Below, in pieces: positions 28,879 to 54,400 of a stretch of 64,000 nt of DNA; positions within the stretch are counted from its first letter, which is position 1; the number at the start of each line of letters is the position of its first letter. Source of the DNA: Ranitomeya imitator (taxonomy: Eukaryota); NCBI RefSeq assembly GCF_032444005.1, contig NC_091291.1, forward strand, positions 120,900,001 through 120,964,000, read 5' to 3'. The notes beneath the pieces were generated by a model that had not been told where the DNA came from, ran no database searches, and worked only from the letters and a program-made list of their open reading frames with translations. The position numbers and the translations under genes were made by a program.

Positions 28879-28879
28879 A

Positions 28880-33476: not shown

Positions 33477-36400
33477 ATGGAGCAAATTGTTGTCCAGGAT
33501 CTTGAGTTTTTGTATGAAGAAATCAGTTCTACTGTGAGGATCGAAAGTGCACCCGATGTGGTACAGTATGCCGTTTTCATGTCCGGTCTTACCCTTTCCC
33601 ATGGTGCACATTTATAACTCCGTGTCCTCCACATAGGAGCTCCGCTTGTGTCATAATGTACAGCCGGCACTGGAAATTACCCCAAGGGGGTAGAAATAGT
33701 GACATTTACGTGGTCACTGTTGTTTTAGAAAACTTTCCACAAATGACTATGCTCAATAAAATAGAAGACACTTTCTCCTTCGCCTCATTGGGGGACACAG
33801 ACCATGGGTGTATGCTGCTGCCACCAGGAGGCTGACACTAAGTAATACAAAGAAAAAGTTAGCTCCTCCCCTGCAGTATACACCCTCCTGCTGGCTCCCA
33901 GCTCCTCCCCTGCAGTATACACCCTCCTGCTGGCTCCCAGCTCCTCCCCTGCAGTATACACCCCCCTGCTGGCTCTCAGCTCCTCCCCTGCAGTATACAC
34001 CCTCCTGCTGGCTCCCAGCTCCTCCCCTGCAGTATACACCCTCCTGCTGGCTCCCAGCTCCTCCCCTGCAGTATACACCTCCTGCTGGCTCTCAGCTCCT
34101 CCCCTGCAGTATACACCTCCTGCTGGCTCTCAGCTCCTCCCCTGCAGTATACACCTCCTGCTGGCTCTCAGCTCCTCCCCTGCAGTATACACCCTCCTGC
34201 TGGCTCTCAGCTCCTCCCCTGCAGTATACACCTCCTGCTGGCTCTCAGCTGCTCCCCTGCAGTATACACCTCCTGCTGGCTCTCAGCTCCTCCCCTGCAG
34301 TATACAGCCTCCTGCTGGCTCTCAGCTCCTCCCCTGCAGTATATACCCTCCTGCTGGCTCTCAGCTCCTCCCCTGCAGTATACACCCTCCTGCTGGCTCT
34401 CGGCTCCTCCCCTGCAGTATACACCTCCTGCTGGCTCTCAGCTCCTCCCCTGCAGTATACACCCTCCTGCTGGCTCTCAGCTCCTCCCCTGCAGTATACA
34501 CCCTCCTGCTGGCTCTCAGCTCCTCCCCTGCAGTATACACCCTCCTGCTGGCTCTCAGCTCCTCCCCTGCAGTATACACCCTCCTGCTGGCTCTCAGCTC
34601 CTCCCCTGCAGTATACACCCTCCTGCTGGCTCTCAGCTCCTCCCCTGCAGTATACACCTCCTGCTGGCTCTCAGCTCCTCCCCTGCAGTATACACCCTCC
34701 TGCTGGCTCTCAGCTCCTCCCCTGCAGTATACACCCTCCTGCTGGCTCTCAGCTCCTCCCCTGCAGTATACACCTCCTGCTGGCTCTCAGCTCCTCCCCT
34801 GCAGTATACACCCTCCTGCTGGCTCTCAGCTCCTCCCCTGCAGTATACACCCTCCTGCTGGCTCTCAGCTCCTCCCCTGCAGTATACACCCTCCTGCTGG
34901 CTCTCAGCTCCTCCCCTGCAGTATACACCTCCTGCTGGCTCTCAGCTCCTCCCCTGCAGTATACACCCTCCTGCTGGCTCTCAGCTCCTCCCCTGCAGTA
35001 TACACCCTCCTGCTGGCTCTCAGCTCCTCCCCTGCAGTATATACCCTCCTGCTGGCTCTCAGCTCCTCCCCTGCAGTATACACCCTCCTGCTGGCTCTCG
35101 GCTCCTCCCCTGCAGTATACACCTCCTGCTGGCTCTCAGCTCCTCCCCTGCAGTATACACCCTCCTGCTGGCTCTCAGCTCCTCCCCTGCAGTATACACC
35201 CTCCTGCTGGCTCTCAGCTCCTCCCCTGCAGTATACACCCTCCTGCTGGCTCTCAGCTCCTCCCCTGCAGTATACACCCTCCTGCTGGCTCTCAGCTCCT
35301 CCCCTGCAGTATACACCCTCCTGCTGGCTCTCAGCTCCTCCCCTGCAGTATACACCTCCTGCTGGCTCTCAGCTCCTCCCCTGCAGTATACACCCTCCTG
35401 CTGGCTCTCAGCTCCTCCCCTGCAGTATACACCCTCCTGCTGGCTCTCAGCTCCTCCCCTGCAGTATACACCTCCTGCTGGCTCTTAGCTCCTCCCCTGC
35501 AGTATACACCTCCTGCTGGCTCTCAGCTCCTCCCCTGCAGTATACACCTCCTGCTGGCTCTCAGCTCCTCCCCTGCAGTATACACCTCCTGCTGGCTCTC
35601 AGCTCCTCCCCTGCAGTATACACCTCCTGCTGGCTCTCAGCTCCTCCCCTGCAGTATACACCTCCTGCTGGCCCCCAGCTAACCAGTTCTTGCTTAGTGT
35701 CCGTAGGAGGCACACGGACGGGTCTGCTATTCAGACCCAAAGAACTCTTTTTTACCGTTTTTTACTTTTTACTACGGTCGAATGGGGCGACGGATTCTTT
35801 CATGTTCCGATCTCCTCGAACCATCAACAGGCGAACACGGGAGTTTCACCTCTCCGTATCCTCTCCTGCGACGTGGGAAGCCACTGCCTGAGCTGATTTT
35901 AGGGGCGACGGGCCCCTTCATGGGCACCGATCTCCCCCTCCCTTATCAGACGAGCACTGGAGTTTCACCTTCAGTATCCTCTTCTGCAGCCAGGCCTATT
36001 GCCGGACATTCAGCCCTGTCCACCAGGTTTTACCCTCGGCTGTACAGAGGCACCTTCCAGCGTGGCGTCCGAGCAGCCCCCACTGCATCACCACTGAAAA
36101 AGCGGATGATGGAAGGAGGCAGACGGTTCCTCTCCACCCCTCTTCTGCAGGGATGGTGGATGGAGGCTCCCCAACCCTGCACCGTCCTATCTACCCGGGC
36201 ACAGCTCCTACCTGCAGCATCTGCCACCCCCTCCATATTGGGGTAAGTGCTCCGTGAGATTTGGGTTTTCCGGCGGTCAGAGGAGGGCTCCATAGCGACT
36301 GGGTCCCCACAGAGCTTCGCGGCACTTTTCCCCTCAGTCTGCGGGTGCGCGCCGGCCGAAGCCATAAATTTAGTCCCCGGCTTCGGCCCTGTTTAGGCTG

Positions 36401-39400
36401 CATCCCGGGAAGCCCCGCCCACCGCTTGCTCCCTTCTAGCGGCTCCGCCCCCCTATTCAGGCGCTTCTCGTTCCAGACGAGATCTCGGCGGCCATCTTCT
36501 TCCTCCTCCATTGCGGTCACTATTTCTTCTGGAGGGGGCTGCGGCCGGCGGTTTTTCAGCGCTGAAGTCAGCGCTATTCCAGACGGGGGACTCAGAACCT
36601 GAGTAAGATGAATCGCCCCAATATCCCCCCCTCCCCCCGGCACGCATCCCGGCAGCATTAAGGGACTAGCTTTCCCTGTTTTTTATATACTTAAGGCTGC
36701 AATCTCTGGTGCTCCTGCAACTACAGAATGTATAGTACAGTGTGCAGGCTTGCAAACAGAGAGCTGTGAGTTCCCAGCAATGAAGCTCTGGTGACTCGTT
36801 CCCTGGTGACTCGTTCCCTGGTGACTCGTTCCCTGGTGACTCGTTCCCTGGTGACTGGTTCCCTGGTGACTGGTTCCCTGGTGACTCGTTCCCTGGTGAC
36901 TGGTTCCCTGGTGACTGGTTCCCTGGTGACTGGTTCCCTGGTGACTCGTTCCCTGGTGACTCGTTCCCTGGTGACTCGTTCCCTGGTGACTGGTTCCCTG
37001 GTGACTGGTTCCCTGGTGACTGGTTCCCTGGTGACTGGTTCCCTGGTGACTGGTTCCCTGGTGACTGGTTCCCTGGTGACTCGTTCCCTGGTGACTCGTT
37101 CCCTGGTGACTGGTTCCCTGGTGACTGGTTCCCTGGTGACTCGTTCCCTGGTGACTCGTTCCCTGGTGACTCGTTCCCTGGTGACTCGTTCCCTGGTGAC
37201 TGGTTCCCTGGTGACTCATTCCCTGGTATTTAATACTCTGCCCGGTAGTCGCTGGGCCCATAGGTGCATCCCCAGCTCTCCATGCCTTTTTATTAAACCC
37301 AGGACCAGCATTCCCTGGTCTTAAGGGTCCCCTAGTTTTAAAAGGGTCACATCCCCAGCATTCTCTGCTCTGCCAGAAGCCGGTCTCCTTTTCCTTAGTA
37401 CTAAATCAGGCCAGTATGCCCTGGTCTTAAAGGCACAGGGCCAGTAGGCACTGGTCTTAAAGGCACATGGCAAGTATGCCCTCGTCTTAAAGGCACATGA
37501 CCAGCATCCCTGGTCTTAAAGGAGCATGACCAGCATTCTTGTTCTTAAAGGCACATTACCAGCTTTGCTGGTCTTTAAGGCACTTGTTCCAACATTCCTT
37601 TCATGACCAGTATTCCTGGTCTTAAAGGCACGTGACCAGCATGCCCTGGTCTTATAGACTCGTGACCAGTATCCCCTGGTCTTAAAGACACGTGTCCAGT
37701 ATACCCTGGTCTTAAAGGCACATGACCAGTATGCCCTTGTCTTAAAGGCACGTGACCAGTATTTCCTGGTCTTAAAGGCACATGACCAGTATGCCCTGGT
37801 CTTAAAGGCACGTGACCAGTATCCCCTGGTCTTAAACGCTATAACCAGTAGGCCCTGGTCTTAAAGGCACATGACCATTATGCCCTGGACTTAAAGGCTC
37901 AGGACCAGTACGCCCTGGTCTTAAACGCAAATGACCAGCATACCCTGGTTTTAAGGGCACATGACCATTATCTCCTGGATTTCAGCATGCCCTGCTTTTA
38001 AAGGCACATGAACAGTATGTCATCTTACAAAAGGCACAAGACCAGTATTCCCTGGTCTTAAAGGCTCAGGGCCAGTAACCCCTAGCCTTAACGGCGCATG
38101 ACCAGTATTTAGTGGTCTTAAGGGCACATCATCTATCCTAAGCTGGTCACCCTAACTGAGCTCTGGAGCACTCACATGCTCCCTCTCCTACAATGGGAGC
38201 CTTCGGCTAGCAGGGGCCCAAGTATTCTAGAAAAACGTACAGGTTCTAGAAAATCTCCATCAAGATTTGACGGTGATGCACTGGAAGACCTCTAAGTAGG
38301 ATACCATACCTGGTCGGAATTTTATGGGCGACGGGTCCCTTAAAGGGCTCCGATTTCCCCCCACACCTTCAAGAGACGAGCACACGGAGTGTCGCCTCCA
38401 TGTATCTTCTTCTGCATCCAGGTCTATCGCCACAACCTGCCCTGTCCACTCGGAAACCTCAATTCTGGGGATGTGGCGTCCACATTTGTGGCGTCCCAAC
38501 AAGGAGGTTTCCCCCCCTTTGTATCAGATGCAAGAAAGTGGACGATTCCTCTCCACTTCCCTGTTAAGAAGATGGTGGATCGAGGTTTTTCCTTATTTTC
38601 TTCTCTGCACGACGATGGCAGAGACCTGCTGGTTACAGTCCCGCATTCTGTCACTTGGCAGACTCGCCGGGCAGAATTTCTTGCGGTATTCCTACCAGTA
38701 TCCTGGCCGGTGTATCATCAATTAAGATTCCACAGACAGTCGGATAGCAAATCTAGTTCGTTCCGTCTTGTGGTTTCGGGTTCAGCGCTCTACCCTTCCT
38801 TAGCCGCATGGGTTGCTTGACCAAAGGGAGAGAATGAAAGTCTCCGGGTCCCAGACCTTATCTACTTCGTTCCACAGTATAGCTGGCCAATCAGATCTTC
38901 TGAGCGGGAGACTAGCAAGGGATCGTATCTCTTCTTCAGGCTCAACCAGCAGTGGAAGCATTGGCCAGGACAGTCTAGATCTAAGGGATCTTGGTTCCAA
39001 AATGGAGGGAATGAAAAGTATCTCCATTCCTGGACCCCAAACTTCTAACAACCTTTAACAGGGCCCTTTCATTTTTCGGATGGAGTTCCTCCGCTCAGCC
39101 ACTACTTCAACAGAGAAACGTGGTTGTTTTCTGGCATCCATCGTCATTCGGGATTCTTACCCTCACATACCTATTTCTCCTCTCTACTATAATCTCTTCG
39201 CCTTTCCATTCGCGAACAGTATTTTCACGACCTGGCCCTTCTGCCTGGCTACGACACCAGAGTGGTCGCAAGGGTCATGACGGTTGTCATGTTCTTCTTG
39301 CACCTTAGAAGCATGGTCGTCCTTCCTCTATTTGGTCGACTTTGTAGCCGCTCTCCTAGGACTACGCTGAGTCGTCCATATCACTTGCAATTACCTCTCT

Positions 39401-42400
39401 ATTGGGCTAGCAGCTAAACTTAGACAAGTTTTTTTCCTCATTCTCAGCCCAGCAGATCCTCTTTGAGGATGATCCTGCCCAAGAAGGATGGTTATTCTCT
39501 CTCGGGTCTAGGTCGTGGCCCTTCTACAGGGAGCTTGCGCACTCGATCTCTCATTCCCTCGGTTCTTTCAATTCACTAGGAGGGTTCTGAGGGAAAGGAC
39601 GTCTACGGAAGCAGTTTCCTTCGCTGTGCTCGTTTTCTGCAAGTCAATCAGGCTCTCAAAGGGTAGTCTCTGAGCTCCTTTCTCTTCCAGAGCCTTCTCC
39701 TGGCCCAAGGGCTATTGGGAGATACCATTGCCAGTTTTCTTCTCCCGATCATCTCTCTGTAGAACCGAACGGTACGGCTATTCCTTCAGCAGGCCCTCTG
39801 CCTTCTGGCGGGTCTTCAGTTGGATAATGCCTCGGCTGTGCCCCAAGTTAGCCATCTAGCAAGTACCCTCAGTCAAGCGCCATGGCTAAGGTACCTCGCA
39901 CTCTCTGATGGGCCGAGTTCTATCTTCGGTGATCTCAACAGTACATTCCCTGGAGTAGTACACTGGGCGGCAGACATATTCAGCCGTCCGGGGTTTTTCC
40001 TCAAGTGAGTGGGAACTTCACTCGGAAATCTTCCATCGGACCTGCCTTCACTGGAGTACTCCAGAGGTAGTTCGGATGGCGTCCAAGCTGAACGCCAATG
40101 TACTCCAGTTCATGGTTTGGCCTCGCGATCCAGGACCATTGCAGTGCATGATCTATTCTTCCATGGTACCAATTTCCATAACCCCTCTTCCACTACGTCT
40201 GAAACCTTTTCGGAAGCGGGTAGGGCCCCAGTGATCCCGGGAGACCCGCACTGACCATGTCAGGTTTTTTTCTCGCTTGCGGTACTAGTATTTTTCCGGC
40301 TTATTGTCTCAAGCTGGAAATATGGTCTTTCTTGCAGGCCTCAACCTGTAGTTCTTCCCTACCACGTACCGTTAAATCCGTGGGACCTTAATGGTCTTGG
40401 GCATCTTACAGTGGACTCCTTTTCTGATCCGGATAGACTTTTCTATCAGGGAGGGTCTCTCCCCTTCTTTCTCTGCGTTCTTGTCCTCCTGATGAGTCTT
40501 CAGATCTCGACGCTCTGTTCTTTATCTTTTTTCCTTATTACCTTCAAGGCAAGGTTGCCCTCTAGCCATCCTATTCCCTCGTTGCCAAGGGGTATTATAT
40601 CTCCACTGTTGCAGGGGCATCGTCCTCTCATCTCCTTCGGCTCTAGTCCACAAAGCGGAATGGGTTCTCCATAATCTGGAAGAAGCGAGTGCTCCGAGTG
40701 GGTACGTATCGAGGACGATGTCCTTCCAAAGGTTGGACATTTTACTCGGGTTTTTCGATGGTAAGTAGGCTTCCTGACGGTCGCAGGAAGGGTTTAGCCG
40801 TTTTTCTTCGGCGAGGTTAGCCTGGTGGATTCTTTTCTCCATCCAGGAGTGCTTTCGCGCTAGATGCCAGCCTATCTCCCTGTCTGAGGGCTCTAGGCGC
40901 CAGACGTCGGCAAGCACGACCGCAGGCTTGCGAATTTCTCCAGGCCGCATGCATTCTTGAAGCACTATATTTCACTCACTTCCACAGATGTGAGTCTGGG
41001 CAGGTGGACTTTGCAGGCCGCGGTGGCGCACTTGTAAGTAGCGGCTACACGGCCTGAAGTGATGTTGTCCCCACCCAGGGACTGCTTTGGGACGTCCTAT
41101 GGTCTGTGTCCCCCAATGAGGCGAAGGAGAAATAGGGATTTTTGTGTACTCACCGTAAAATCCTTTTCTCCGAGCCATTCATTGGGGGACACAGCTCCCA
41201 CCCTATTATTAGCTTATGCTTTGTTTTTATCTTTTGATATGTTATACTCTTATATATAATGTGACATGCTTTACGCTTATATGTCGTTATTGATCTCCTA
41301 CTGCTTTTGCACCGAACTGGTTAGCTGGGAGCCAGCAGGAGGGTGTATACTGCAGGGGAGGAGCTAACTTTTTCTTTGTATTACTTAGTGTCAGCCTCCT
41401 GGTGGCAGCAGCATACACCCATGGTCTGTGTCCCCCAATGAATGGCTCGGAGAAAAGGATTTTACGGTGAGTACACAAAAATCCCTATTTGTAATGCATC
41501 TTATCAGAGAGATATGCTTTGTTCTCCACTTATGAGCCACTTCTATCCTTCTGCCTACTGAACTCATCCATTCACAACTGGGGAATTCCTTCTTGGTTAA
41601 AGCAAAACAGACCCTCCCCATTCACTGAGAGATCAGATTACAGCTGCCTATTGATGTCTATGAAGGAAGGAGGAGTACTCTGCACAATCAGAGGCCAGGT
41701 AGAGAGGCAGGCTGATCCTGCTGCAACTTATAAGAAATGGTGCTGAATTCACAGCCACACAGCTCAGTAATGCTTCAGTTGCAATCACAATGATTTAACC
41801 CCCATTTACAAACATTCTGCTGTTTGCCATAAACCAATGAAATGGATATATTGTCTTGAACTATTTACATTGTAACAAGGTTTCTTCTAATTTATAACAA
41901 AATGCCACTTTTACTGACTACTGAATTCCCAGAATTATTCACATCCTTCATGACATGCATCTTCACTACTTAGAGCCTCTCTGGCTGTTATAACCTGCTG
42001 CAAACATGATCCATAGTCAGACAACCGCTTCTGGCAGTGTTCCTTAGAAATATTAGCCCATTCCTCATGGACAATGGCCTTCAGCTCACTAATATTCTTA
42101 GGTTTGTGTGATGCAACTGCAAATCCTATCAAGTATTTTTTTTATGAGAGTCAATTCGGGTGAGTGACAGACGTTGAAAAATCTACCAGGACGTTTTCTG
42201 AAACCAAATATTGTGGTATGCTTGGGATCGTTGTCCAGTTGGAAGGTCCAATGACACTCAAACTTTAGCCTCCTCAAGGGAGGTATGAAGATTCCTCCTA
42301 AGGTTTCTTGATATCTGATTAAATCGATCTTTACTGCTTCATTGTTGGCATCACCAAGCCAATGCTATGTGTCATTGTAGGCATCATTGCGCCAGCATGC

Positions 42401-45400
42401 TTATCTGTAGGCATCACTGGTCACCACAACGCTTCACTGTAGGTGTTAATGAGCCACCACCATGCTTCACTGTAGGCAGGATATTCTTTTCAATGTATGC
42501 TTCATCCTTCCTCCTCCAGACATACCGCTTATCCGTAGGCCCAAGAAGTTCCAGTTTTGTTTCTGTTCTCTATAAAGGCACGGATGATTGACCTCGTGGA
42601 GACCAAAACATCTAACACCGCGGAGACACCATCACGTGTTTCTCAACGCAGTGATCCAGAACACTGCCCCCAAATATGCAAATGCAAGTAGACGAGCTGC
42701 GGAGACACCATCACATGTTTCTCAACGCAGGCAGTGAATAGCCAGGCCTTTCCCCGGGAAGGAACAACCAAGGGAAGGGCAGCATCCAATAAAGGAAAAA
42801 ATCCAATAAAGGAAAACCACCTATGCCAAGCATGGTATCCATCCACAGACAGCTGTTTCGGGGTTTTTGCCCCTCATCAGTGTGGAGTAGGAAACTGGCT
42901 ATCAGGAGCAGTGCCTAGTAGAAAGTCTATAAAGGCACTGATGATTGACCTCGTGGAGACCAAAACATCCAACACCGCGGAGACACCATCACGTGTTTCT
43001 CAACGCAGTGATCCAGAACACTGCCCCCAAATATGCAAATGCAAGTAGAGGAGCTGCGGAGACACCATCACATGTTTCTCAACTCAGGCAGTGAATAGCC
43101 AGGCCTTTCCCCGGGAAGGAACAACCAAGGGAAGGACAGCATCCAATAAAGGAAAACATCCAATAAAGGAAAACCACCTATGCCAAGCATGGTATCCATC
43201 CACAGACAGCTGTTTCGGGGTTTTTGCCCCTCATCAGTGTGGAGTAGGAAACTGGCTATCAGGAGCAGTGCCTAGTAGAAAGGCTATAAAGGCACGGATG
43301 ATTGACCTTGGCCTGGCTATTCACTTATAGACTTTCTACTAGGCACTGCTCCTGATAGCCAGTTTCCTACTCCACACTGATGAGGGACAAAAACCCCGAA
43401 ACAGCTGTCTGTGGATGGATACCATGCTTGGCATAGGTGGTTTTCCTTTATTGGATGTTTTCCTTTATTGGATGCTGCCCTTCCCTTGGTTGTTCCTTCC
43501 CGGGGAAAGGCCTGGCTATTCACTGCCTGCGTTGAGAAACATGTGATGGTGTCTCCGCAGCTCCTCTACTTGTTTCTGTTCTCTACAGAACAGAATCTCA
43601 GAACCTCTTTACATTATTTATATGGGTTTGAGCATATTGGAGACGTCTTTTCTTATTCTTTTGGGTCAGTAGAGGCGAAGTCTTGGAGTTCGGTCGTGGA
43701 GACATTCAGTCTGCGTCTGCGGCCACTACATCTTTCTGCAAGTTTTTTTTTTTTTTGCAGACATTCAAGGATTGTAATGAGCGGTTGACACCATGAAACG
43801 CCCAATGGTATTGGAGCAGTTGACACCATTTGGTCCCACTATTGCTCATTGTTTCCTTCCTTCACAGGCCAGAGCGTGTACTCCGATCCATGTTTTCTCA
43901 TCGTGTGCACTGTACGCCCCTATACGTTTTGTTTCCAGTACATTATGTTTTGTTTTACATTTTTGCACCAAAAAGTATCTGTGTATGCAATGTTTATATC
44001 ATAAGTCTTTTTATCTATATTACTTTGCATATTTCCCCTCTTTTTATCTATATTACTTTGCATATTTCCCCTTTAGGTGTTGATGCCCTCACCCGAAATC
44101 TGCCAGTTGAAAACTTTGGATTCCTTGGAGGCTGCCATGCAGGCCATTAATGAGTTTGAGGAAAGCACCATCTCAAATTATACTGTTGTAGAGAAAAAAA
44201 AAGATTTTGGAAATGAAGGTAATCTTAACTGTTGGTTTTCATGAACATTAATTCTAAAGGGTTATTTTAGCCTTTTAGACTGATTTTAGGTCCCACCGAT
44301 CACCAGAACTGGGGACTAGTGTGCTCCATTCTCTATTGGCCTCCATACTGCATAGATTGGCCGGTCGCACATGCATGGAAGAAGCTTTTTACTCCTCTAT
44401 AGTACTGAAAATAACCTGATATAGCCCAGCACTGCACAGCACTCTGCTATATTTGTGAGTGCCATTGAATTAAATATTGCCTCAGGTCGCATATGCGACC
44501 TGACACTCATTGCATCTCCTCCTTGTCACGTTCTTGCTTGCCCCCGCTCAAGTAGTCATCTGGGGTCCAATACCAATCTCAGAGGATAGGGTATAACTTA
44601 TTTAGGTTATAATTCCCATTGCTGTTTTTGTGAAACCTGTGATGTCCATGATGATTTTATATAATGACTTTTTCATAGAGAAAATGATCCTTTGTTTTGG
44701 GAAGTCGGGAGAGATGGTTATTGGCCGGACCACCATTCTGACAACACCTATCTAATGTGTATGGCCGGCTTGTGTCTATATGATCCCTCCACCTACAGAG
44801 ATCAATAGATTGCCAGTCGTTCTTTATTCCATGAGCTCTCTTATTTAAAGGGGTTTCCAGTTTCAGGGGAAAAAAAGTCCCCGGTTGCAGTTTAAAAAAA
44901 AAAAAAAAAACCTCCTCGGGTCCACTGCTGAGTCTCCACCACTTATCCTGGTGTCTCTTACTGTCTGCAGCGCTGACGTTACAGCAACAGCGCTGCAAAC
45001 AATCACTGTGGTCAGCAGCTCTGCCAAATTGAAAGCATGAGCCGCTTAGCTTACTGATTGGCTGCAGCGCTGTCCAAGTGACATTAATGCTACAGACAAC
45101 GGAAAAAAGCAGCGGAGACTCAGCGCTGGACCCAGAGACGGTGAATAAAGCAAAGTAGTAAATGATTTTGTGGTAATTTTTTTTTTTTCTACTTTGATAT
45201 TTTTAAAGCATTCAAGCCGACGTCGAAGCTTACCTTGCACTGGGAAGGACCGTTCATTAATAACGTTTCGCTGAATGAGTACTCAGGAGTTCCCTTCATG
45301 ATTGTTGGAAGAAAGGTTTTAGGTTGCCATCTTGGTAGGGACAAGGCACTAGCCCAGAAAAGGAAATATGCCGAGTCTATAAGTCAGAGAGAGGTAAAAC

Positions 45401-48400
45401 CTTTTGATTCTAGATAATTTATTGAACGATTTAGACTATGTGTATTATTAATGGTGTGTACGTCTTTACATAGTTGCTCCATACATACCGTATAGTAAAA
45501 TAAAGCACCTACAGGAATGGTAGTGACCGAAAATACTAATTTGGAGCACTGATGACAGTGACATAGTATTCTGCTTATGAAAACAATCTCCTGCAGCAGC
45601 CTATCCCCAAAGTTAGTGAGCCCCAGGTGCTGAGCTCACCCATCACTGCCATCAACTGTACTCCAAATGACTACATTCTGATTATTAATGTAGCTGAAAG
45701 CAAATAGTTTGGGGGAAAGCCAGGGTTTGGAAGTCACTTATGTGCAGTTTATTTCCATGAAAGAATTCATATCCTTTAATATAGTGATTTGCACACAAAT
45801 ATATAAATATAAATATGAACGTTTAGTTACTCTTCAACATTGAAAAGTCATTTTCTCCTTCGCCTCATTGGGGGCCACAGCCCGTGGTGTTTGCTGCTGA
45901 CACTAAGTGATACAAAGAAAGTTCTCTCCTCCCCTGCAGTATACACCTCCTGCCGGCTCTCAGCTCCTCCCCCGCAGTATACACCTCCTGCTGGTTCTCA
46001 GCTCCTCCCCTGCAGTATACACCCTCCTGCTGGCTCTCGGCTCCTCCCCTGCAGTATACACCCTCCTGCTGGCTCTCAGCTCCTCTCCTGCAGTATACAC
46101 CTCCTGCTGGCTCTCAGCTCCTCCCCTGCAGTGTACACCCTCCTGCTGGCTCTCAGCTCCTCCCCTGCAGTATACACCTCCTGCTGGCTCTCAGCTCCTC
46201 CCCTGCAGTGTACACCCTCCTGCTGGCTCTCAGCTCCTCCCCTGCAGTATACACCTCCTGCTGGCTCTCAGCTCCTCCCCTGCAGTGTACACCCTCCTGC
46301 TGGCTCTCAGCTCCTCTCCTGCAGTATACACCTCCTGCTGGCTCTCAGCTCCTCCCCTGCAGTGTACACCCTCCTGCTGGCTCTCAGCTCCTCCCCTGCA
46401 GTATACACCTCCTGCTGGCTCTCCGCTCCTCCCCTGCAGTATACACCCTCCTGCTGGCTCTCAGCTCCTCCCCTGCAGTGTACACCTCCTGCTGGCTCTC
46501 CGCTCCTCCCCTGCAGTATACACCTCCTGCTGGCTCTCAGCTCCTCCCCTGCAGTATACACCTCCTGCTGGCTCTCAGCTCCTCCCCTGCAGTATACACC
46601 TCCTGCTGGCTCTCAGCTCCTCTCCTGCAGTATACACCTCCTGCTGGCTCTCAGCTCCTCCCCTGCAGTGTACACCTCCTGCTGGCTCTCCGCTCCTCCC
46701 CTGCAGTATACACCTCCTGCTGGCTCTCAGCTCCTCTCCTGCAGTATACACCTCCTGCTGGCTCTCAGCTCCTCTCCTGCAGTATACACCTCCTGCTGGC
46801 TCTCAGCTCCTCCCCTGCAGTGTACACCTCCTGCTGGCTCTCCGCTCCTCCCCTGCAGTATACACCTCCTGCTGGCTCTCAGCTCCTCTCCTGCAGTATA
46901 CACCTCCTGCTGGCTCTCAGCTCCTCTCCTGCAGTATACACCTCCTGCTGGCTCTCCGCTCCTCCCCTGCAGTATACACCTCCTGCTGGCTCTCAGCTCC
47001 TCCCCTGCAGTATACACCCTCCTGCTGGCTCTCAGCTCCTCCCCTGCAGTATACACCCTCCTGCTGGCTCTCAGCTCCTCCCCTGCAGTATACACCTCCT
47101 GCTGGCTCTCAGCTCCTCCCCTGCAGTATACACCCTCCTGCTGGCTCTCAGCTCCTCCCCTGCAGTATACACCCTCCTGCTGGCTCTCAGCTCCTCCCCT
47201 GCAGTATACACCCTCCTGCTGGCTCTCAGCTCCTCCCCTGCAGTATTCACCCTCCTGCTGGCTCTCAGCTCCTCCTCTGCAGTATACACCTCCTGCTGGC
47301 TCTCAGCTCCTCCCCTGCAGTGTACACCTCCTGCTGGCTCTCAGCTCCTCCCCTGCAGTATACACCTCCTGCTGGCTCTCAGCTCCTCCCCTGCAGTATA
47401 CACCCTCCTGCTGGCTCTCAGCTCCTCCCCTGCAGTATACACCCTCCTGCTGGCTCTCAGCTCCTCCCCTGCAGTGTACACCCTCCTGCTGGCTCTCAAC
47501 TCCTCCCCTGCAGTATACAGCCTCCTGCTGGCTCTCAGCTCCTCCCCTGCAGTATACACCCTCCTGCTGGCTCTCAGCTCCTCCCCTGCAGTATACACCT
47601 CCTGCTTCCTCTCAGCGCCTCCCCTGCAGTATACACCTCCTGCTGGCTCTCAGCTCCTCCCCTGCAGTATACACCTCCTGCTGGCTCTCAGCTCCTCCCC
47701 TGCAGTATACACCCTCCTGCTTCCTCTCAGCTCCTCCCCTGCAGTATACACCTCCTGCTGGCTCTCAGCTCCTCTCCTGCAGTATACACCTCCTGCTGCT
47801 CTCAGCTCCTCCCCTGCAGTATACACCTCCTGCTGGCTCTCAGCTCCTCCCCTGCAGTATACACCCTCCTGCTGGCTCTCAGCTCCTCCCCTGCAGTATA
47901 CACCTCCTGCTGGCTCTCGGCTCCTCCCCTGCAGTATACACTTTCCTGCTGGCTCTCGGCTCCTCCCCTGCAGTATACACCTCCTGCTGGCTCTCGGCTC
48001 CTCCTTTGCAGTATACACCTCCTGCTGGCTCTCGGCTCCTCCTTTGCAGTATACACCTCCTGCTGGCTCTCGGCTCCTCCCCTGCAGTATACACCCTCCT
48101 GCTGGCTCTCAGCTCCTCCCCTGCAGTATACACCCTCCTGCTGGCTCTCGGCTCCTCCTTTGCAGTATACACCTCCTGCTGGCTCTCGGCTCCTCCCCTG
48201 CAGTATACACCTCCTGCTGGCTCTCGGCTCCTCCCCTGCAGTATACACCCTCCTGCTGGCTCTCAGCTCCTCCCCTGCAGTATACACCCTCCTGCTGGCT
48301 CTCGGCTCCTCCCCTGCAGTATTCACCCTCCTGCTGGCTCTCGGCTCCTCCCCTGCAGTATACACCCTCCTGCTGGCTCTCGGCTCCTCCCCTGCAGTGT

Positions 48401-51400
48401 ACACCCCCCTGCTGGCTCTCAGCTCCTCCCCTGCAGTATACACCCTCCTGCTGGCTCTCAGCTCCTCCCCTGCAGTATACACCCTCCTGCCGGCTCTCAG
48501 CTCCTCCCCTGCAGTATACACCTCCTGCTGGCTCTCGGCTCCTCCCCTGCAGTATACACCCTCCTGCTGGCTCTCAGCTCCTCCCCTGCAGTATACACCT
48601 CCTGCTGGCTCTCGGCTCCTCCCCTGCAGTATACACCTCCTGCTGTCTCTCGGCTCCTCCCCTGCAGTATACACCTCCTGCTGGCTCTCGGCTCCTCCCC
48701 TGCAGTATACACCTCCTGCTGGCTCTCAGCTCCTCCCCTGCAGTATACACCTCCTGCTGGCTCTCAGCTCCTCCCCTGCAGTATATACCTCCTGCTGGCT
48801 CTCGGCTCCTCCCCTGCAGTATACACCCTCCTGCTGGCTCTCAGCTCCTCCCCTGCAGTATACACCCTCCTGCTGGCTCTCGGCTCCTCCCCTGCAGTAT
48901 TCACCCTCCTGCTGGCTCTCGGCTCCTCCCCTGCAGTATACACCCTCCTGCTGGCTCTCGGCTCCTCCCCTGCAGTATTCACCCTCCTGCTGGCTCTCGG
49001 CTCCTCCCCTGCAGTATACACCCTCCTGCTGGCTCTCAGCTCCTCCCCTGCAGTATACACCTCCTGCTGGCTCTCAGCTCCTCCCCTGCAGTATACACCT
49101 CCTGCTGGCTCTCAGCTCCTCCCCTGCAGTATACACCCTCCTGCTGGCTCTCAGCTCCTCCCCTGCAGTATACACCCTCCTGCCGGCTCTCAGCTCCCCT
49201 GCAGTATACACCTCCTGCTGGCTCTCGGCTAACCAGTTCTTGCTTAGTGCCTGTAGGAGGCACATGGGTCTGTTTCAGACCCCAACGTTTTTATTTTACT
49301 TTTCTGTAAATTTGTATTTTGTAATTAACGGAGTGAAGGGGGTGACGGATCCTTTCAAGGTTCCGATCTTCCCCGAACCATCAACAGGCGAGCACGGCGA
49401 GTATACCTCCCCGTACCCTCTCCTGTGACGTGGGAAGCCATGCCTGAGCTCACTTCAGGGGCGACGGTTCCTTTCATGGTCCCGATCTCCCCACACCAGC
49501 AGCAGGCTACCACATGGAGTGTCACCTCCATGTATCCTCTCCTGGAGCCAGGCCTAATGCCGGACAACTGGCCCTGTTCACCTGGCGACTGAACTCCGTG
49601 GATGTACAGAGGCCCCTCTCTATGGCGTCCGAGCAGCCCCCACTGTCCCACCACTGTGAAAGCGGATGGCACAAGGAGGCGGACGGGTCCTCTCCACCTC
49701 CCTAACAAACGGATGGTGGATTGAGGTTTATCCCTGCACCGTCCACACTGCAATACCCGACCTGCAGTCATCCGCGGCGGCTCCATGCCGGGACGCGCAC
49801 CGATGGTGAGTGGATCCAGTCAGCGGTGGGCCTCTGCAGCGGGATATTCACATGCTGACAGGCAGCCTCAGCTTCCCTGTGGCCCACCTCCCTGAGGTAA
49901 CGCTCCAGCCGGCTGCAAAAATTTAGCCCCCGGCTTCGGCCGATGTGTAGGCCGCAACCCAGAAGCGCACTATGGCGCCCTAAGATGGTTCCGCCCGCTT
50001 TTCTTGCGCTTCTCGCCTGGCACGGAAGCGCTCAATTTTCTCGGCCACAACGCCCCTCACTTCTACCGCTGGTATCGCTCCCGCAGGTGCAGGAATTTAG
50101 GCCCCGGCTTGGGCCTGTTCATGGAAGTCTCGAGGCTCCACCCCCCCGAATTGGCGCTTCTCGCCCTCTGCAAGATTTTATCACCTCTGCAACTCCCAGT
50201 GGCCATCTTGGTCCACCCGGCCGGCTCACACAGGGGCGACGACTTTGTATTAACCCCTTTCTGACCTCGGACGGGATAGTACATCCGAGGTCAGAAGCCC
50301 CGCTTTGATGTGGGCTCCGGCGGTGAGCCCGCATCAAAGCCGGGACATGTCAGCTGTTTTGAACAGCTGACATGTGCCCGTAATAGGCGCAGGCAGAATC
50401 GCGATCCACCCGCCGCTATTAACTAGTTAAATGCCGCTGTCAAACGCAGACAGCGGCATTTAACTACCGCTTCCGGCCGGGCGGCCGGAAATGATCGTAT
50501 CGCCGACCCCCGTCACATGATCGGAGGTCGGCGATGCTTGTACATTGTAACCATAGAGGTCCTTGAGACCTCTATGGTTACTGATCACCGGCAGCTGTGA
50601 GCACCACCCTGTGGTCGGCGCTCACAGCACACCTGCAATTCTGCTACATAGCAGCGAACATCAGATCGCTTCTATGTAGCAGAGGCGATCGAGTTGTGCC
50701 TGCTTCTAGCCTCCTATGGAGGCTATTGAAGCATGACAAAAGTAAAAAAAAATAATAAAAAAAAATGTGAAAAAAATAAAATATAAAAGTTTAAATCACC
50801 CCCCTTTCGCCCCAGTCAAAATAAGTCAATAAAAAAAATCAATCTTACAAATATTTGGTATCGCCGCGTTCAGAATCGCCCGATCTATCAATAAAAAAAA
50901 AGCATTAACCTGATCGCTAAACGGCGTAGCGAGAAAAAAATTCGAAACGCCAGAATTCCTTTTTTTTGGTCGCTGCGACATTGCATTAAAATGCAATAAT
51001 GGGCGATCAAAAGAACGTATCTGCACTGAAGTGGTATAATTAAAAACTCCAGCTCGGAACGCAAAAAATAAGCCCTCAACCGACCCAGATCATGAAAAAT
51101 GGAGACGCTACGAGTATCGGAAAATGGCGCAATTTTTTTTTTTTTTTTAGCAAAGTTTGGAATTTTTTTTCACCACTTAGATAAAAAATAACCTAGACAT
51201 GTTTGGTGTCTATGAACTCGTACTGACCTGGAGAATCACAATGGCAGCTCAGTTTTAGCAGTTAGTGAACCTAGCAAAAAAGCCAAACAAAAAACAAGTG
51301 TGGGATTGCACTTTTTTTTGCAATTTCACTGCACTTGGAATTTTTTTCCCGTTTTCTAGTACATGACATGGTAAAACCAATGGTGTTGTTCAAAAGTACA

Positions 51401-54400
51401 ACTCGTCCCGCAAAAAATAAGCCCTCACATGACCATATTGACGAAAAAATAAAAAAATTATGGCTCTGGGAAGGAGGGGAGTGAAACATGAACACGGAAA
51501 AACGGAAAATCCCAATGTCATGAAGGGGTTAAAGGAGCACAACGACTCTGCACATGGCATGATTAAGGCATGACCCTGGTCTTAAAGGCACATGACCAGT
51601 ATTCTCTGGTCTTAAAGGCACATAACCAGTATTCCCTGGTCTCAAAGGCACACGACCAGTATTCCCTGGTCTTAGAGGCACACGACCAGTATTCCCTGGT
51701 CTTAAAGGCACACGACCAGTATTCCCTGGTCTTAAAGGCACACGACCAGTATTCCCTGGTCTTAAAGGCACACGACCAGTATTCCCTGGTCTTAAAGGCA
51801 CACGACCAGTATTCCCTGGTCACATGACCAATCCGAAGCCGGTCACCCTAAATGAGTTCAGGAGCCCTCTGCCACTGATCCCAGTTTTTCCCAGTGTACC
51901 TAGTTCCCTCAGGACTTCATCACTGCCGCAACCCATGGTTTCTCTGACCAAGAGATTGAAACCCTCCGTGGCTCGGAGTGCTCGCAGGACCGATATACAT
52001 GGTCCCTCTCCTACATGGGATCCGTCGGGTACCAGGGGCCGCAAGTATTCTAGAAACGTACAGGCATCTAGAAAAAGAAAGTTTTCATTTCATGATCTCT
52101 CTCTCCAAGGATTTGCTGAGGGATGTACAAAGGCAACATGGATCGGATATTGCCTTGGACCTGGACTTGCCAGAGCTTCAGTAAATGATGAACGCTCCTA
52201 TTTATATCATCAACCAATCTCTGTACATTGACGAGGACTCCGGTTCTGCTCTACACTACGCAGTGTCCCTCATAAGGAGACTAAACTCCCTCGTAGAGCA
52301 TTTGCCATTCAGTCCAGATATGCGATTCACTGGACAGAAGCCTCTACGTGGGATGCCATGCCTGGTCTGATTTTTAAGAGCGACGGGTCCTTTAAAGGGC
52401 TCCAATCTCCCCACACTATCAACAGACGAGCACACGGAGTGTCGCCTCCATGTATCCTCTTCTGCATCCAGACCTAACGCCAGACAACCTGTCCTGTCCA
52501 CCCGGAGACCTGAACTCTGTGGATGTACAGAGGCACCCTTTTCAGGCGTCTGAGCACCCCCTCTGCATCACCACTATTTAGCAGAAGATGCAAGAAGGCG
52601 GACAATCCCTCTCCACTTCCCTGTTAAGAGGATGATGGATCGAGGGTTCCTAATTTTTATCTGCACCGTCAAAAGAGAGCGGCGATGGCAAGAGACTATG
52701 ACCTGCTGGATGCAGCCGCACATTCTGCCACTTGGCAGATTAATCGGGTAGAATCTCCTGTTGTATACCTACCAATATACCTGCCTGATGTGTCATCAAT
52801 TGAAAATACCACAGACTGTCAAATAGCATCTGGTTCGTTCCATTTTGCGGCTTCGGGCCCAGAGCTCTACCCTCCCTAGCCGCCGCATGGATTGCTAGAG
52901 CAATGGTCTCCTGGCTGGAGACCTTAACTACTTTGATTCACACCAGTAACCTTTTCCTGAAGACAGTACAACTGGCCAATCAAATCTTTTGAGCGGGAGA
53001 CTAACAAAGGATCGTACGTCCCTACAGCCCCAACCGGCAGTGGAAGGGTTGTCTAGAACAGTCTAGATCTAAGGGATCTTGATTCCAAAAAGGGGAACGA
53101 AAAGTAAGACCGATCCTGGACCTCAAACTTCTAACAACCTTTGACATGGTCCTCCTTCTTCGAATGGAATTCCTCTGCTCAGCCATTACTTCAACAGAAA
53201 AAGGTGGAGTTTCTGGCATCCATCGACATTCGGGATGCTTACCCTCTTCAAAAATTTCCTTCGCTTTTCCATTCGTGAACAGCATTTTCAAGTCACGACC
53301 TTGTCCTTCGGCTTTGCTACCGCACCCAGAGTGTTCGCAAGACTCATGGTGGCTGTCATGTTCCTGTTGCACCCTAGAGGCGTGCTCGTCCTGCCCTGTT
53401 TGGCCGACTGTCTTGACGCCCTTCCAGGACTACACTGAGTCATCTATATCACTTGCGATACCCTCTCACCTGGGCTGGCATCTAAACTTAGACAAGTTCT
53501 CCTCATTTCCAGCCCAGCAGATATCCTTTTTGAGGATGATCCTGCACACTTCTAGAAGGATGGTAATCCTCCCTCGAGATAAGGTCATGGCCCTTCAACA
53601 TGGAGCTCGCGCATGTGATCACTCACCTCCTCATTTCATTCGATTTGCTGGGAGGGTTCTGAGGAAAAATGGTGACGACAATGGAAGCGGTTTCCTTCGC
53701 TCCATTCGTTTTCAGCAAGTCAAACAGACTTTCAGACGATAGTCTCTGAGCTCCTTCTTCATCCAGGGCCTTTCTCCTGGTTCCATGGTTATTAGTAACT
53801 ACCAATGCCAGTCTTCTTCTCCTGATCATTGCTCTGGAGATCTCAATGGTAGTCCTACAGCAGGTCCACTGCCTTCTGGCGGGTCAACCCATCCGAATTC
53901 AATTGGACAATGCCACGGCTGTGCCATACGTCAATCATCTAGCAGGTACTCACGGTCAGGCGCCATGGCCGAGGTACCTCACATTCTCTGATGGGCCGAG
54001 ACCTATCATTTGGTGATCTCGGCAGTACATATCCCAGGAGTAGAACTCTGGGCGGCGAACACATTCAGCCGTCAGGGTTTCGCCTCAAGTGAGTGGGAAC
54101 TTCACCCGGAGGTCTTCCATCAGACCTGCCTTCACTGGAGCTCTCCAGTTGTAGATCGGAGGGCGTCCAGATTGATCGCCAATGTACTTGAGTTCGTGGT
54201 TCGACCTCAAGATCCAAGAGCCATCGCACTGCATGCTCTGGTTCTTCCGTGGCACCAGTTTCCATAACTCCCCTTCCACTACTTCCGAAAGCCTTTCAGA
54301 AACAGAAAGGGCCCCAGTGATCCTCGGAAATCCGCACTGACCACGTCAGTTGTTTGCTTGCGGAGCTGGTAGCTTTCCGCCTTTCTGCAACAAAACTGCA

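What the first reader, a model, noticed from the sequence alone, without database searches (positions are those of the whole stretch)
42573..43569. Tandem hammerhead-ribozyme repeat (357-nt monomer): a retrozyme-like mobile RNA
Seen: three minimal type I hammerheads with a full CUGAUGA/GAAA core and GUC site. Two are in direct repeat exactly 357 bp apart and one is inverted. No ORF was recognised. The insertion has a 16-bp TSD and a 5' inversion. Helix III closes on the palindrome AGCU. Established: minimal hammerheads with palindromic helix III occur in Penelope-like pLTRs, newt satellite 2 and animal non-LTR retrozymes, and cleave as dimers of adjacent copies. Inference: minus-strand transcription would release a 357-nt monomer able to circularise and be retrotransposed by a Penelope RT. 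The inverted copy is sense to the host CARF-like pre-mRNA and has a helix II mismatch, which may limit cleavage of the host transcript.
Basis: partly seen in the sequence, partly recalled or inferred. Interest (0 to 1): 0.87.

Follow-up and report, generated by a model that had tools for sequence, protein, structure and literature searches.

The report
Hammerhead retrozyme insertion in frog intron
A 1-kb insertion in an intron of a poison-frog-like genome carries 2.07 tandem copies plus one inverted partial copy of a 357-nt non-coding unit with a hammerhead ribozyme: a clean but ordinary example of the "non-LTR retrozymes" already described in amphibians.

Summary
There are three hammerhead (HHR) motifs. 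Two are identical on the - strand, exactly 357 nt apart, and one lies on the + strand. They sit in a 997-bp insertion flanked by a perfect 16-bp target-site duplication (TSD). Removing the insertion and one TSD copy restores a continuous, decayed Tc1-like transposase frame, so it is a real insertion. It has no coding capacity.

The ribozymes are not "minimal" PLE-type motifs. They are canonical metazoan type I HHRs: a 6-bp helix I with an internal loop, a 4-bp helix II, and a 2-bp helix III capped by the palindromic loop AGCU. This is the architecture known to need dimerisation.

The layout is a partial tandem, an adjacent head-to-head inverted truncated copy, junction microhomologies and a 16-nt template-switch filler. 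This is the published signature of Penelope-like element (PLE) integration, and it fits twin-primed reverse transcription of an HHR-sense RNA at least 2.07 units long or circular.

The host is an ALS2CR8/CARF-domain gene on the + strand. The insertion lies in intron 1.

This locus is probably a dead copy. The inverted arm sequesters one tandem HHR and the host-sense HHR in a ~248-bp duplex. The helix II mismatch is one of eight private post-insertion changes.

Verdict: a new member of a known kind. Genome-wide dispersal, expression and the PLE partner could not be tested.

The parts
42557..42572 (.). Left copy of the 16-bp target-site duplication TTGTTTCTGTTCTCTA. Its last 3-4 nt (TCTA) are also the start of the repeat unit, giving microhomology at the junction.
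   Evidence: family D5, 100% identity; sequence
42569..42925 (-). Retrozyme unit 1 (357 nt; HHR-sense strand is -). This is the 3'-most unit of the sense strand and abuts the left TSD.
42826..42898 (-). Hammerhead 1, canonical type I. Core 42848-42880; predicted cleavage after C at 42848, between 42848 and 42847 on the - strand.
   Evidence: (HH9, 26.1 bits, full model)
42926..43282 (-). Retrozyme unit 2 (357 nt), 98.3% identical to unit 1.
43183..43255 (-). Hammerhead 2, identical to hammerhead 1. Core 43205-43237; predicted cleavage after C at 43205. Cleavage at hammerheads 2 and 1 would release - strand 43204..42848, which is 357 nt.
43283..43308 (-). Partial third unit (about 25 nt), the 5' end of the tandem block in the sense orientation. 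The block therefore has 2.07 copies.
   Evidence: (family D2)
43310..43325 (+). 16-nt filler at the head-to-head junction. It is an exact extra copy of 43509-43524 (GGCCTGGCTATTCACT) and is read as a template switch during cDNA synthesis.
   Evidence: D6, I9, I10; the template-switch interpretation is inference
43325..43572 (+). Inverted, truncated copy (248 nt, HHR-sense on +). It sits head to head with the tandem block, and its last 3 nt (TTG) overlap the right TSD (microhomology).
   Evidence: (I1 99%, I2 98%)
43359..43431 (+). Hammerhead 3, sense to the host gene. Core 43377-43409. A private G>A change gives an A.C mismatch at the top of helix II, leaving 3 bp.
   Evidence: (22.1 bits)
43570..43585 (.). 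Right copy of the 16-bp target-site duplication.
   Evidence: D5
41700..43760 (-). Insertion target: a decayed Tc1-like DNA transposon on the - strand, interrupted by the insertion. After deleting 42573-43585 in silico, the transposase-like frame reads straight through the site (...DSVL*RTETKLELLGPTDKRYVWRRK...). The FQLDNDPKHT motif follows further on.
   Evidence: Calling it Tc1-like rests on my knowledge of Tc1 transposase motifs; Pfam gave no hit at E<=0.01.
33477..58605 (+). Host gene with an ALS2CR8/CARF domain. Exons by tblastn: 33477-33563, 44077-44220, 45205-45399, 55882-55968, 56869-57018, 58453-58605. The insertion lies in intron 1, with its right TSD ending 491 bp upstream of the exon 2 acceptor.
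   Evidence: (Pfam ALS2CR8, 26.9 bits against a cutoff of 28.9 on one exon), (86-97% identity to Ranitomeya P0122; splice signals; the orthologue is annotated with PF15299 and has the same PPCS neighbour)

Best explanation
This is one insertion of a non-autonomous, non-coding 'non-LTR retrozyme' in an anuran genome. The host-gene exons are 86-97% identical to the Ranitomeya (poison frog) protein.

Shown by the sequence:
- A 357-nt unit carries a canonical type I hammerhead. It is present as 2.07 head-to-tail copies plus a 248-nt inverted copy placed head to head.
- The whole is bounded by a 16-bp TSD and nested in an old Tc1-like transposon inside intron 1 of an ALS2CR8/CARF-domain gene.

Inferred mechanism of insertion:
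- Integration was by target-primed reverse transcription with twin priming.
- A nick on the + strand after 42572 primed cDNA1 (42573 to 43308) on an HHR-sense RNA that was either circular (rolling-circle copying) or multimeric.
- A second nick 16 nt away on the - strand primed cDNA2 (43569 to 43325) at an internal site on the same RNA.
- The two cDNAs were joined after a 16-nt template switch.
- Both arms have their sense 3' ends pointing outward, as this model requires.
- The partial tandem plus adjacent inverted 5'-truncated copy is the published hallmark of Penelope-like element (PLE) integration, so a PLE RT/GIY-YIG endonuclease acting in trans is the most likely mobiliser.

Inferred family life cycle (from the literature): tandem transcripts self-cleave after GUC through a dimeric hammerhead whose helix III is the 8-bp palindrome ACAGCUGU. 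The 357-nt monomer is circularised by a host tRNA ligase and then serves as RT template.

This particular copy is probably inert. It is antisense to the host gene, no promoter was identified, and its inverted arm sequesters one tandem HHR and the host-sense HHR in a ~248-bp duplex.
For: - The HHR core and spacing cannot be chance: 3 matches against 0 in 100 shuffles. All three align over the full length of Rfam HH9.
- The architecture matches the published 'canonical metazoan type I' definition: helix I 6 bp, helix II 4 bp, helix III 1-2 bp with a 2-4-nt palindromic loop (PMC4209133).
- The tandem, the inverted copy, the TSD and the filler are all present.
- The reconstructed empty site restores a continuous Tc1-like frame.
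- There is no coding capacity.
- All 8 differences among the copies are singletons, so a single template sequence was copied and the copies then decayed independently.
- The dimer cofold forms the intermolecular 8-bp helix III at -55.5 kcal/mol, against -50.0 for two monomers.
- The monomer fold keeps helices I and II and brings the cleaved ends together; z = -2.3.
- Unit length (357 nt), GC (49%) and a TSD longer than 4 bp fit the published description of metazoan retrozymes. The axolotl families are 330 and 350 nt and need dimers (PMC7229834).
- Retrozymes were found in all seven amphibians sampled and are phylogenetically tied to PLE pLTRs (bioRxiv 10.64898/2026.07.22.740005).
- The PLE insertion signature is described in PMC8557442.
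- There is no poly(A) or A-rich 3' end, and the nick site CTCTA/CAGA is not the L1-type TTTT/AA site (L1 site preference from my knowledge).
Against: - Only one locus was seen. There is no second copy in the window, none in metagenome contigs and no relative of its longest open frame in the protein collection. 'Mobile family' is therefore inferred from one insertion footprint.
- No PLE RT or GIY-YIG gene is in the window. The only RVT_1 hits are a DIRS-like element and a LINE-like fragment.
- The HHRs score about half the Rfam gathering threshold, and no cleavage, expression or circle data exist.
- In Xenopus, 8 of 9 predicted retrozyme dimers did not cleave in vitro.
- Twin priming with 7-20-bp TSDs is also typical of L1.
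- A circular template cannot be told apart from a homogeneous multimeric one.
Confidence: 0.72

Rival explanations
1. It is a heavily 5'-truncated copy of an autonomous Penelope-like element. On this reading the 357-nt unit is a tandemly repeated terminal (pLTR) segment of a coding PLE, not a separate non-autonomous family.
For: The insertion architecture is exactly that described for PLEs. PLE termini carry tandem HHRs. In Xenopus, 24 of 57 retrozyme families match PLE termini. Most PLE insertions are 5'-truncated.
Against: The HHR is the canonical loop-bearing type found in retrozymes. PLE min-HHRs have a helix II of 7-8 bp, a helix I of 4-5 bp and no helix III loop. More than two full 357-nt periods are present, with no trace of RT/EN sequence. 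No PLE is in the window.
Confidence: 0.15
2. It is the same retrozyme RNA, but it was mobilised in trans by a LINE (L1- or L2-type) reverse transcriptase rather than a PLE. The 5' inversion would then be classical L1-style twin priming.
For: A 16-bp TSD and a 5' inversion with junction microhomology are classic L1 features (my knowledge). A LINE-type RT fragment is in the window at 21233-21745. PMC7229834 leaves 'LINEs or PLEs' open.
Against: There is no poly(A) or A-rich tail at the sense 3' end, and the nick site is not TTTT/AA-like. The tandem-plus-inverted layout and the co-distribution and phylogeny of retrozymes with PLEs favour PLEs.
Confidence: 0.08
3. It is a DNA-level event: local tandem duplication plus inversion, or a foldback-type DNA element or nascent satellite, with no RNA intermediate.
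For: Li et al. discuss local amplification of retrozyme units into satellites by unequal crossover. Inverted repeats can arise from replication errors.
Against: A precise 16-bp TSD and clean restoration of the interrupted Tc1 frame show that foreign sequence was inserted as one event. No source copy lies nearby. The outward-pointing sense 3' ends, the microhomologies and the templated filler are RT footprints.
Confidence: 0.03
4. It is a co-opted intronic element. On this reading the host-sense hammerhead, or the 248-bp hairpin, regulates processing of the ALS2CR8-like pre-mRNA, as proposed for the amniote intronic HH9/HH10 ribozymes.
For: The + strand HHR is sense to the host gene and lies about 670 nt upstream of exon 2. 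Its best Rfam match is the intronic HH9 family. The hairpin scores as miRNA-precursor-like.
Against: The copies are young and decaying neutrally: 8 singletons in about 990 nt, one of them inside this HHR. The lone HHR has a weak helix III and is buried in the duplex in the MFE fold. Retrozymes are depleted from introns genome-wide in Xenopus. There is no conservation evidence.
Confidence: 0.02

Closest known systems
Axolotl non-LTR retrozymes Rtz_331 / Rtz_353 (Cervera & de la Pena 2020, PMC7229834)
   Same: Amphibian host. Non-coding tandem unit of 330-350 nt (here 357). One canonical type I HHR per unit with a very short helix III capped by a palindromic tetraloop, cleaving efficiently only as a dimer. 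The predicted monomer is highly self-paired with the HHR free to form.
   Different: The axolotl families form long arrays, with about 120,000 motifs. Here a single 2.07-copy insertion is seen. No sequence comparison was possible, and expression and circles were not shown here.
Xenopus non-LTR retrozyme families, including REP4_XT (Li, Clavereau & Pollet 2026, bioRxiv 10.64898/2026.07.22.740005)
   Same: Anuran host. Mean consensus length in Amphibia is 316 bp. Most families have few repeat units (dimers are common). About 43% of copies are intronic. The families derive from PLE pLTRs.
   Different: That study does not describe insertion-level anatomy (TSD, inverted 5' copy), which this locus shows clearly.
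Newt satellite 2 'extended hammerhead' (Epstein & Gall 1987; Forster et al. 1988; reviewed in PMC6155905)
   Same: About 330-nt tandem unit. Type I HHR with an internally looped helix I, a specific loop 2 and GAAAC-palindromic tetraloop-GUC. Dimeric cleavage.
   Different: Satellite 2 is a high-copy satellite with its own promoter (from memory: snRNA type). Here there is a solitary TSD-bounded insertion.
Penelope-like element insertions and their pLTR min-HHRs (PMC4209133; PMC8557442)
   Same: Partial tandem plus an adjacent inverted 5'-truncated copy, variable junction extras, and HHRs that act as dimers through a palindromic helix III.
   Different: There is no RT/GIY-YIG ORF. The HHR is canonical (helix I 6 bp with a loop, helix II 4 bp with a loop). 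PLE min-HHRs have a long helix II, a short helix I and no loop-loop contacts.
Rfam Hammerhead_HH9 (RF02275), amniote intronic ribozyme
   Same: It is the best-scoring Rfam model, with a full-length alignment. Both have a 6-bp helix I, a UAC-containing loop 1 and a helix II capped by an A-rich loop. Here too, one copy is intronic and sense.
   Different: The score is 22-26 bits against a gathering score of 52. HH9 has a stable helix III and is an ultraconserved single-copy motif. This one is a young repeat copy.
L1 twin-priming 5' inversions
   Same: Head-to-head inverted 5' segment, microhomology at the junctions, and a TSD in the 7-20 bp range.
   Different: There is no poly(A) tail and no L1-type nick site. 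The template is a repeated or circular non-coding RNA.

Membership tests
Hammerhead ribozyme, canonical metazoan type I | Conserved core CUGANGA ... GAAA with A15.1-U16.1 and an NUH cleavage triplet | tested here: met
   CUGAUGA, GAAA and GUC are present in all three copies. No shuffle matched.
Hammerhead ribozyme, canonical metazoan type I | Type I topology: helix I (about 6 bp) open-ended with loop 1, helix II (about 4 bp) with loop 2, and helix III of 1-2 bp capped by a 2-4-nt palindromic loop (PMC4209133) | tested here: met
   Helix I is UCCACA/UGUGGA, followed by a UAC/U internal loop and a distal stem. Helix II is GGGG/CCCC with loop CAAAAA. Helix III is AC/GU with loop AGCU.
Hammerhead ribozyme, canonical metazoan type I | Reaches the curated Rfam gathering score of a hammerhead model | tested here: not met
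   Best score is 26.1 bits against 52 for RF02275. No hit at gathering thresholds. The deficit lies in the short helix III and the distal helix I.
Hammerhead ribozyme, canonical metazoan type I | Site-specific self-cleavage | not testable with these tools
   Needs in vitro transcription of monomer and dimer. In Xenopus only 1 of 9 predicted dimers cleaved.
Metazoan non-LTR retrozyme | Head-to-tail repeats of about 170-400 bp, each with a type I HHR | tested here: met
   357 nt x 2.07 copies, with an HHR in each full unit.
Metazoan non-LTR retrozyme | Non-coding and without LTRs | tested here: met
   No Pfam hit and no protein relative. There are 1-7 stops per unit in each of the six frames. 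The unit is a plain tandem. PBS and PPT motifs were not searched for specifically.
Metazoan non-LTR retrozyme | GC below 50% and, when present, a TSD longer than 4 bp | tested here: met
   GC is 49.3%, which is borderline. The TSD is 16 bp. The published definition is quoted.
Metazoan non-LTR retrozyme | Multiple dispersed copies in the genome (a mobile family) | not testable with these tools
   The source genome is not searchable. There is one locus in the window, and nothing in the metagenome or protein collections.
Metazoan non-LTR retrozyme | Expressed as linear and circular monomer RNA | not testable with these tools
   No transcriptome access. Folding shows only that the cleaved ends are brought together by helix I.
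Penelope-like element (autonomous) / pLTR | ORF with a PLE-type RT and a GIY-YIG endonuclease | tested here: not met
   No ORF lies in the insertion. The window's RVT_1 hits are a DIRS-like element and a LINE-like fragment.
Penelope-like element (autonomous) / pLTR | min-HHR architecture: long helix II, short helix I, no loop-loop contacts and no helix III loop | tested here: not met
   Canonical architecture instead.
Penelope-like element (autonomous) / pLTR | Insertion layout: partial tandem plus an adjacent inverted 5'-truncated copy | tested here: met
   against the description in PMC8557442. This supports 'integrated like a PLE', not 'is a PLE'.
Satellite DNA (newt satellite 2 type) | Long homogeneous arrays | tested here: not met
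   Only 2.07 copies, bounded by a TSD.

The most novel reading that the evidence does not exclude
The locus preserves, almost undecayed, the footprint of one retrozyme integration: outward-facing sense 3' ends, a 16-bp staggered cut, 3-4-nt primer microhomologies, a templated 16-nt switch, more than two unit lengths copied from one template sequence, and ends that do not coincide with the HHR cleavage site. Read this way, it would be direct locus-level evidence that animal retrozyme RNA, most simply a circle copied by rolling-circle reverse transcription, is integrated by the twin-primed, tandem/inverted mechanism peculiar to Penelope-like elements. That link has so far been argued only from co-occurrence and phylogeny.
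Probability: 0.4. Interest if true: 0.45.

Novelty: new member of a known kind. Interest (0 to 1): 0.3.

Why it matters
Hammerhead retrozymes are a second, ribozyme-based route to abundant circular RNAs in animals, and how they are mobilised is still inferred rather than shown. This copy adds no new kind of element. It is, however, a tidy specimen. It has a precise TSD and an empty site verifiable from the interrupted Tc1 frame. It has the PLE-style tandem/inverted layout. All of its variants are private, so it was copied from a single template sequence (a circle, or a multimer of identical units). Collected genome-wide, such loci could test the PLE-mobilisation and rolling-circle models. The locus also places a ~248-bp near-perfect hairpin and a sense ribozyme about 0.5 kb upstream of an exon, a natural case for asking how introns tolerate such insertions.

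Tried and rejected
1. Rfam at gathering thresholds over the whole window gave nothing. Only the permissive search showed the HH9 alignments. The stronger 'miRNA' hits (MIR5229, mir-550, E about 1e-9) and the IRES_Cx43 hit are artefacts of the 248-bp inverted repeat and were rejected.

2. Looking for other copies:
- blastn of the unit against the window found only the three known copies and an internal 32-nt repeat.
- An exact 26-mer scan of the metagenome contigs gave 0 hits.
- A degenerate HHR pattern gave 4 loci. L002 and L004 carry HHR-like motifs (L002 shares GAAACAGCUGUC), but their flanks are unrelated to the unit.
- The unit's longest open frame, searched against 5.8 billion proteins as a proxy for transcripts in public assemblies, gave no candidate.

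3. Fetching the orthologous Ranitomeya loci to look for an empty site: the gene neighbourhoods came back but no DNA, because the files are too large.

4. The supplement of the 2026 preprint was read for consensus sequences. The one table read (supplementary file 1) is only an oligo order form.

5. The bacterial promoter/terminator scan is irrelevant to a eukaryotic locus and was ignored.

6. An octamer-plus-TATA 'snRNA-type promoter' idea was considered. ATGCAAAT occurs once per unit, but window-wide it is not above chance (4 observed, 3.3 expected). It would also drive the strand antisense to the tandem HHRs. It is kept only as a passing note.

7. Covariation analysis was not attempted. The three copies come from one event and differ only by singletons.

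8. Papers PMC2933863 and PMC5785218 are not held.
Full report
**What is in the sequence**

The stretch 42573-43569 is 997 bp of foreign sequence between two perfect copies of TTGTTTCTGTTCTCTA, at 42557-42572 and 43570-43585. Inside it, Tandem Repeats Finder reports a 357-nt period with 2.1 copies at 42569-43308, 97% matches. blastn of unit 1 against the window finds unit 2 (98.3%), a 25-nt third start, an inverted partial copy at about 99% identity and nothing else in 64 kb. That inverted copy is 248 nt at 43325-43572 by the repeat finder. The finder also shows a 16-nt stretch at the head-to-head junction (43310-43325) that is an exact extra copy of 43509-43524.

A hammerhead pattern (core, CGAAAC, GUC) matches three times. 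None of 100 dinucleotide shuffles gave a match. The matches are - strand 42848-42880 and 43205-43237, which are identical and 357 nt apart, and + strand 43377-43409, which has one G>A change.

**The ribozyme type**

Rfam gives no hit at gathering thresholds. In the permissive search all three motifs align end to end with Hammerhead_HH9, at 26.1, 26.1 and 22.1 bits against a gathering score of 52.

The alignment and direct reading show the following:
- helix I of 6 bp (UCCACA/UGUGGA), followed by an internal loop (UAC opposite U) and a distal stem;
- helix II of 4 bp (GGGG/CCCC) capped by CAAAAA;
- helix III of only two pairs capped by AGCU.

This is word for word the 'canonical' metazoan type I hammerhead defined by Cervera and de la Pena (PMC4209133). 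It is not the 'min-HHR' of PLE pLTRs, which has a long helix II, a short helix I and no loop contacts.

ACAGCUGU is an 8-nt palindrome. Cofolding two 81-nt hammerhead domains gives an intermolecular 8-bp helix III with both helices II intact, at -55.5 kcal/mol against -50.0 for two separate monomers. This agrees with the dimeric mechanism established for newt and axolotl motifs.

The 357-nt product of two cleavages (- strand 43204..42848) folds with helix I closing its two ends. The linear MFE is -122.1 kcal/mol, z = -2.3. As a circle it is 66% paired with helices I and II retained.

**It is a true insertion**

Deleting 42573-43585 in silico and translating the - strand gives a continuous, stop-riddled Tc1-like transposase frame across the junction (...DSVL*RTETKLELLGPTDKRYVWRRKDEAYIEKNILPTVKHGGGS...). 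The FQLDNDPKHT motif follows further on. Calling this Tc1-like rests on my knowledge of Tc1 transposase motifs, because Pfam found nothing at E<=0.01 in these fragments. The insertion is thus nested in an old DNA transposon, and the 16-bp repeat is a genuine TSD.

**No coding capacity**

Every frame has at least one stop per unit. The 118-codon open frame has no Pfam match and no relative among 5.8 billion proteins.

**How it got there (inference)**

In the tandem block the HHR-sense strand is -. In the inverted arm it is +. Both sense strands therefore run 5' to 3' outward towards the flanks. This is the geometry expected if two cDNAs grew inward from the two staggered nicks of one target site.

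- The + strand 3'-OH after 42572 shares TCTA with the unit. It would have primed cDNA1 through 2.07 unit lengths.
- The - strand 3'-OH 16 nt away shares CAA/TTG. It would have primed cDNA2 at an internal position.
- cDNA2 ran 248 nt, switched template for 16 nt, and was joined to cDNA1.

A template of at least 2.07 units is needed, so the RNA was circular or multimeric. The insertion ends do not coincide with the GUC cleavage site, which excludes a cleaved linear monomer. All eight differences among the copies are private to one copy. Hence one template sequence was copied and the copies then decayed independently, about 0.8% in total. That suggests a few million years at typical vertebrate neutral rates, which is a rough estimate from my own knowledge.

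Partial tandems with an immediately adjacent inverted 5'-truncated copy and odd junction extras are the published hallmark of PLE insertions (PMC8557442). There is no poly(A) tail and the nick site is not L1-like. I therefore favour a PLE enzyme acting in trans. This agrees with the co-distribution and phylogenetic evidence of Li et al. 2026 and the suggestion of Cervera and de la Pena 2020. No PLE gene is in the window, so the partner remains unidentified.

**Host and context**

PPCS lies on the - strand with exons between about 24.0 and 28.9 kb. Its best matches are anuran, mostly hyloid, proteins.

An exon-like ORF at 45166-45414 hits Pfam ALS2CR8 (the CARF family) at 26.9 bits against a cutoff of 28.9. 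It has a polypyrimidine-AG acceptor and a GTAAAA donor. Searching the exon against 1.84 billion representatives found frog proteins, which are named 'uncharacterized' in Anomaloglossus, Ranitomeya, Bufo and Eleutherodactylus.

tblastn of the 495-aa Ranitomeya protein maps six exons on the + strand at 86-97% identity: 33477-33563, 44077-44220, 45205-45399, 55882-55968, 56869-57018 and 58453-58605. In both Ranitomeya assemblies the gene is annotated with PF15299 and has PPCS as its divergent neighbour, as here.

The insertion is therefore in intron 1, and its right TSD ends 491 bp upstream of the exon 2 acceptor.

**Consequences for this copy**

The two tandem hammerheads are antisense to the host transcript. 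In the MFE fold of a transcript of either strand across the locus, the inverted arm pairs over its whole length with a tandem unit. This buries the + strand hammerhead and one of the two - strand hammerheads. Release of a 357-nt monomer from this locus is thus doubtful.

The host pre-mRNA is more likely to carry a ~248-bp hairpin than an active ribozyme. That hairpin is the source of the spurious miRNA-like Rfam hits.

The helix II G>A change is one of eight singleton changes and the only one in that arm. About a quarter of the arm is hammerhead, so its position is unremarkable. Nothing suggests selection to spare the host RNA.

**Comparison with what is known**

Unit length, GC (49.3%), lack of coding capacity, one canonical dimer-dependent type I hammerhead per unit, a long TSD and an amphibian host all match the metazoan non-LTR retrozymes of PMC7229834. 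They also match the vertebrate survey of Li et al. 2026. That survey found retrozymes in all seven amphibians sampled, a mean unit length of 316 bp, mostly few units per locus, about 43% of copies intronic, and derivation from PLE pLTRs.

The defining features I could test are met. Dispersal, expression, circles and cleavage could not be tested with these tools. The element is not itself a PLE, because it has no ORF and a non-minimal HHR. It is not a satellite array either.

**Verdict**

This is a real, well-preserved and correctly spotted feature, but it belongs to a published class: a new member of a known kind. Its modest extra value is as a textbook-quality insertion footprint linking retrozymes to PLE-style twin-primed integration. 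Interest 0.3.

Noticed in passing
window 33477-58605 (+): The ALS2CR8/CARF-domain host gene is built from an internally repeated module of exons. Exon 2 (44077-44220) and the exon at 58453-58605 are paralogous, about 74% identical in DNA. The Anomaloglossus homologue matches the 61-aa exon three times. NCBI names the frog orthologues only 'uncharacterized'.
   Followed up: partly
window 24055-28890 (-) and 33477 (+): PPCS (phosphopantothenate-cysteine ligase; exons about 28177-28890, 26437-26949 and 24055-24387) lies head to head with the ALS2CR8-like gene, about 4.6 kb apart. The same neighbourhood is annotated in Ranitomeya variabilis and R. imitator.
   Followed up: partly
window 11477-15841 (+): A GC-rich (55-61%) DIRS-like retroelement with a LAP2alpha-like domain, RVT_1 and RNase H, and long overlapping open frames. 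One 947-aa ORF has no Pfam hit. DIRS-like fragments also lie at about 39.0-40.3 kb and 52.6-55.1 kb, inside introns of the host gene.
   Followed up: partly
window 33861-35680 and 45926-49230: Two related, strongly C/T-skewed 38/39-nt minisatellites (47 and 86 copies, 95-97% matches) lie in introns 1 and 3 of the host gene. They produce kilobase-long spurious ORFs. Another 38-nt array of 46 copies lies at 24581-26315 in a PPCS intron.
   Followed up: no
window 42676-42683 and 43033-43040 (+): A canonical octamer ATGCAAAT occurs once per retrozyme unit, about 250 nt upstream of a TATAAAG at the next unit boundary. This recalls the snRNA-type promoter reported (from my memory) for newt satellite 2. 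However, it is on the strand antisense to the tandem hammerheads, and the window-wide count is not above chance.
   Followed up: partly
window 42620-42651 / 42699-42730 (and the same in unit 2): Each unit contains an internal 32-nt direct repeat (GCGGAGACACCATCAC[G/A]TGTTTCTCAACGCAG, 79 nt apart) and a 17-nt tandem duplication (ATCCAATAAAGGAAAA[A]). The unit itself therefore grew by internal duplications.
   Followed up: no
window 21233-21745 (+): A LINE-type reverse transcriptase fragment (RVT_1, E = 1.5e-17), unrelated to the retrozyme.
   Followed up: no
L002:155-182 (+) and L004:705-732 (-): Two metagenome contigs carry hammerhead-like motifs with palindromic helix III loops. L002 shares the exact GAAACAGCUGUC with this element but has different flanks. 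They are presumably from eukaryotic DNA in those samples.
   Followed up: no
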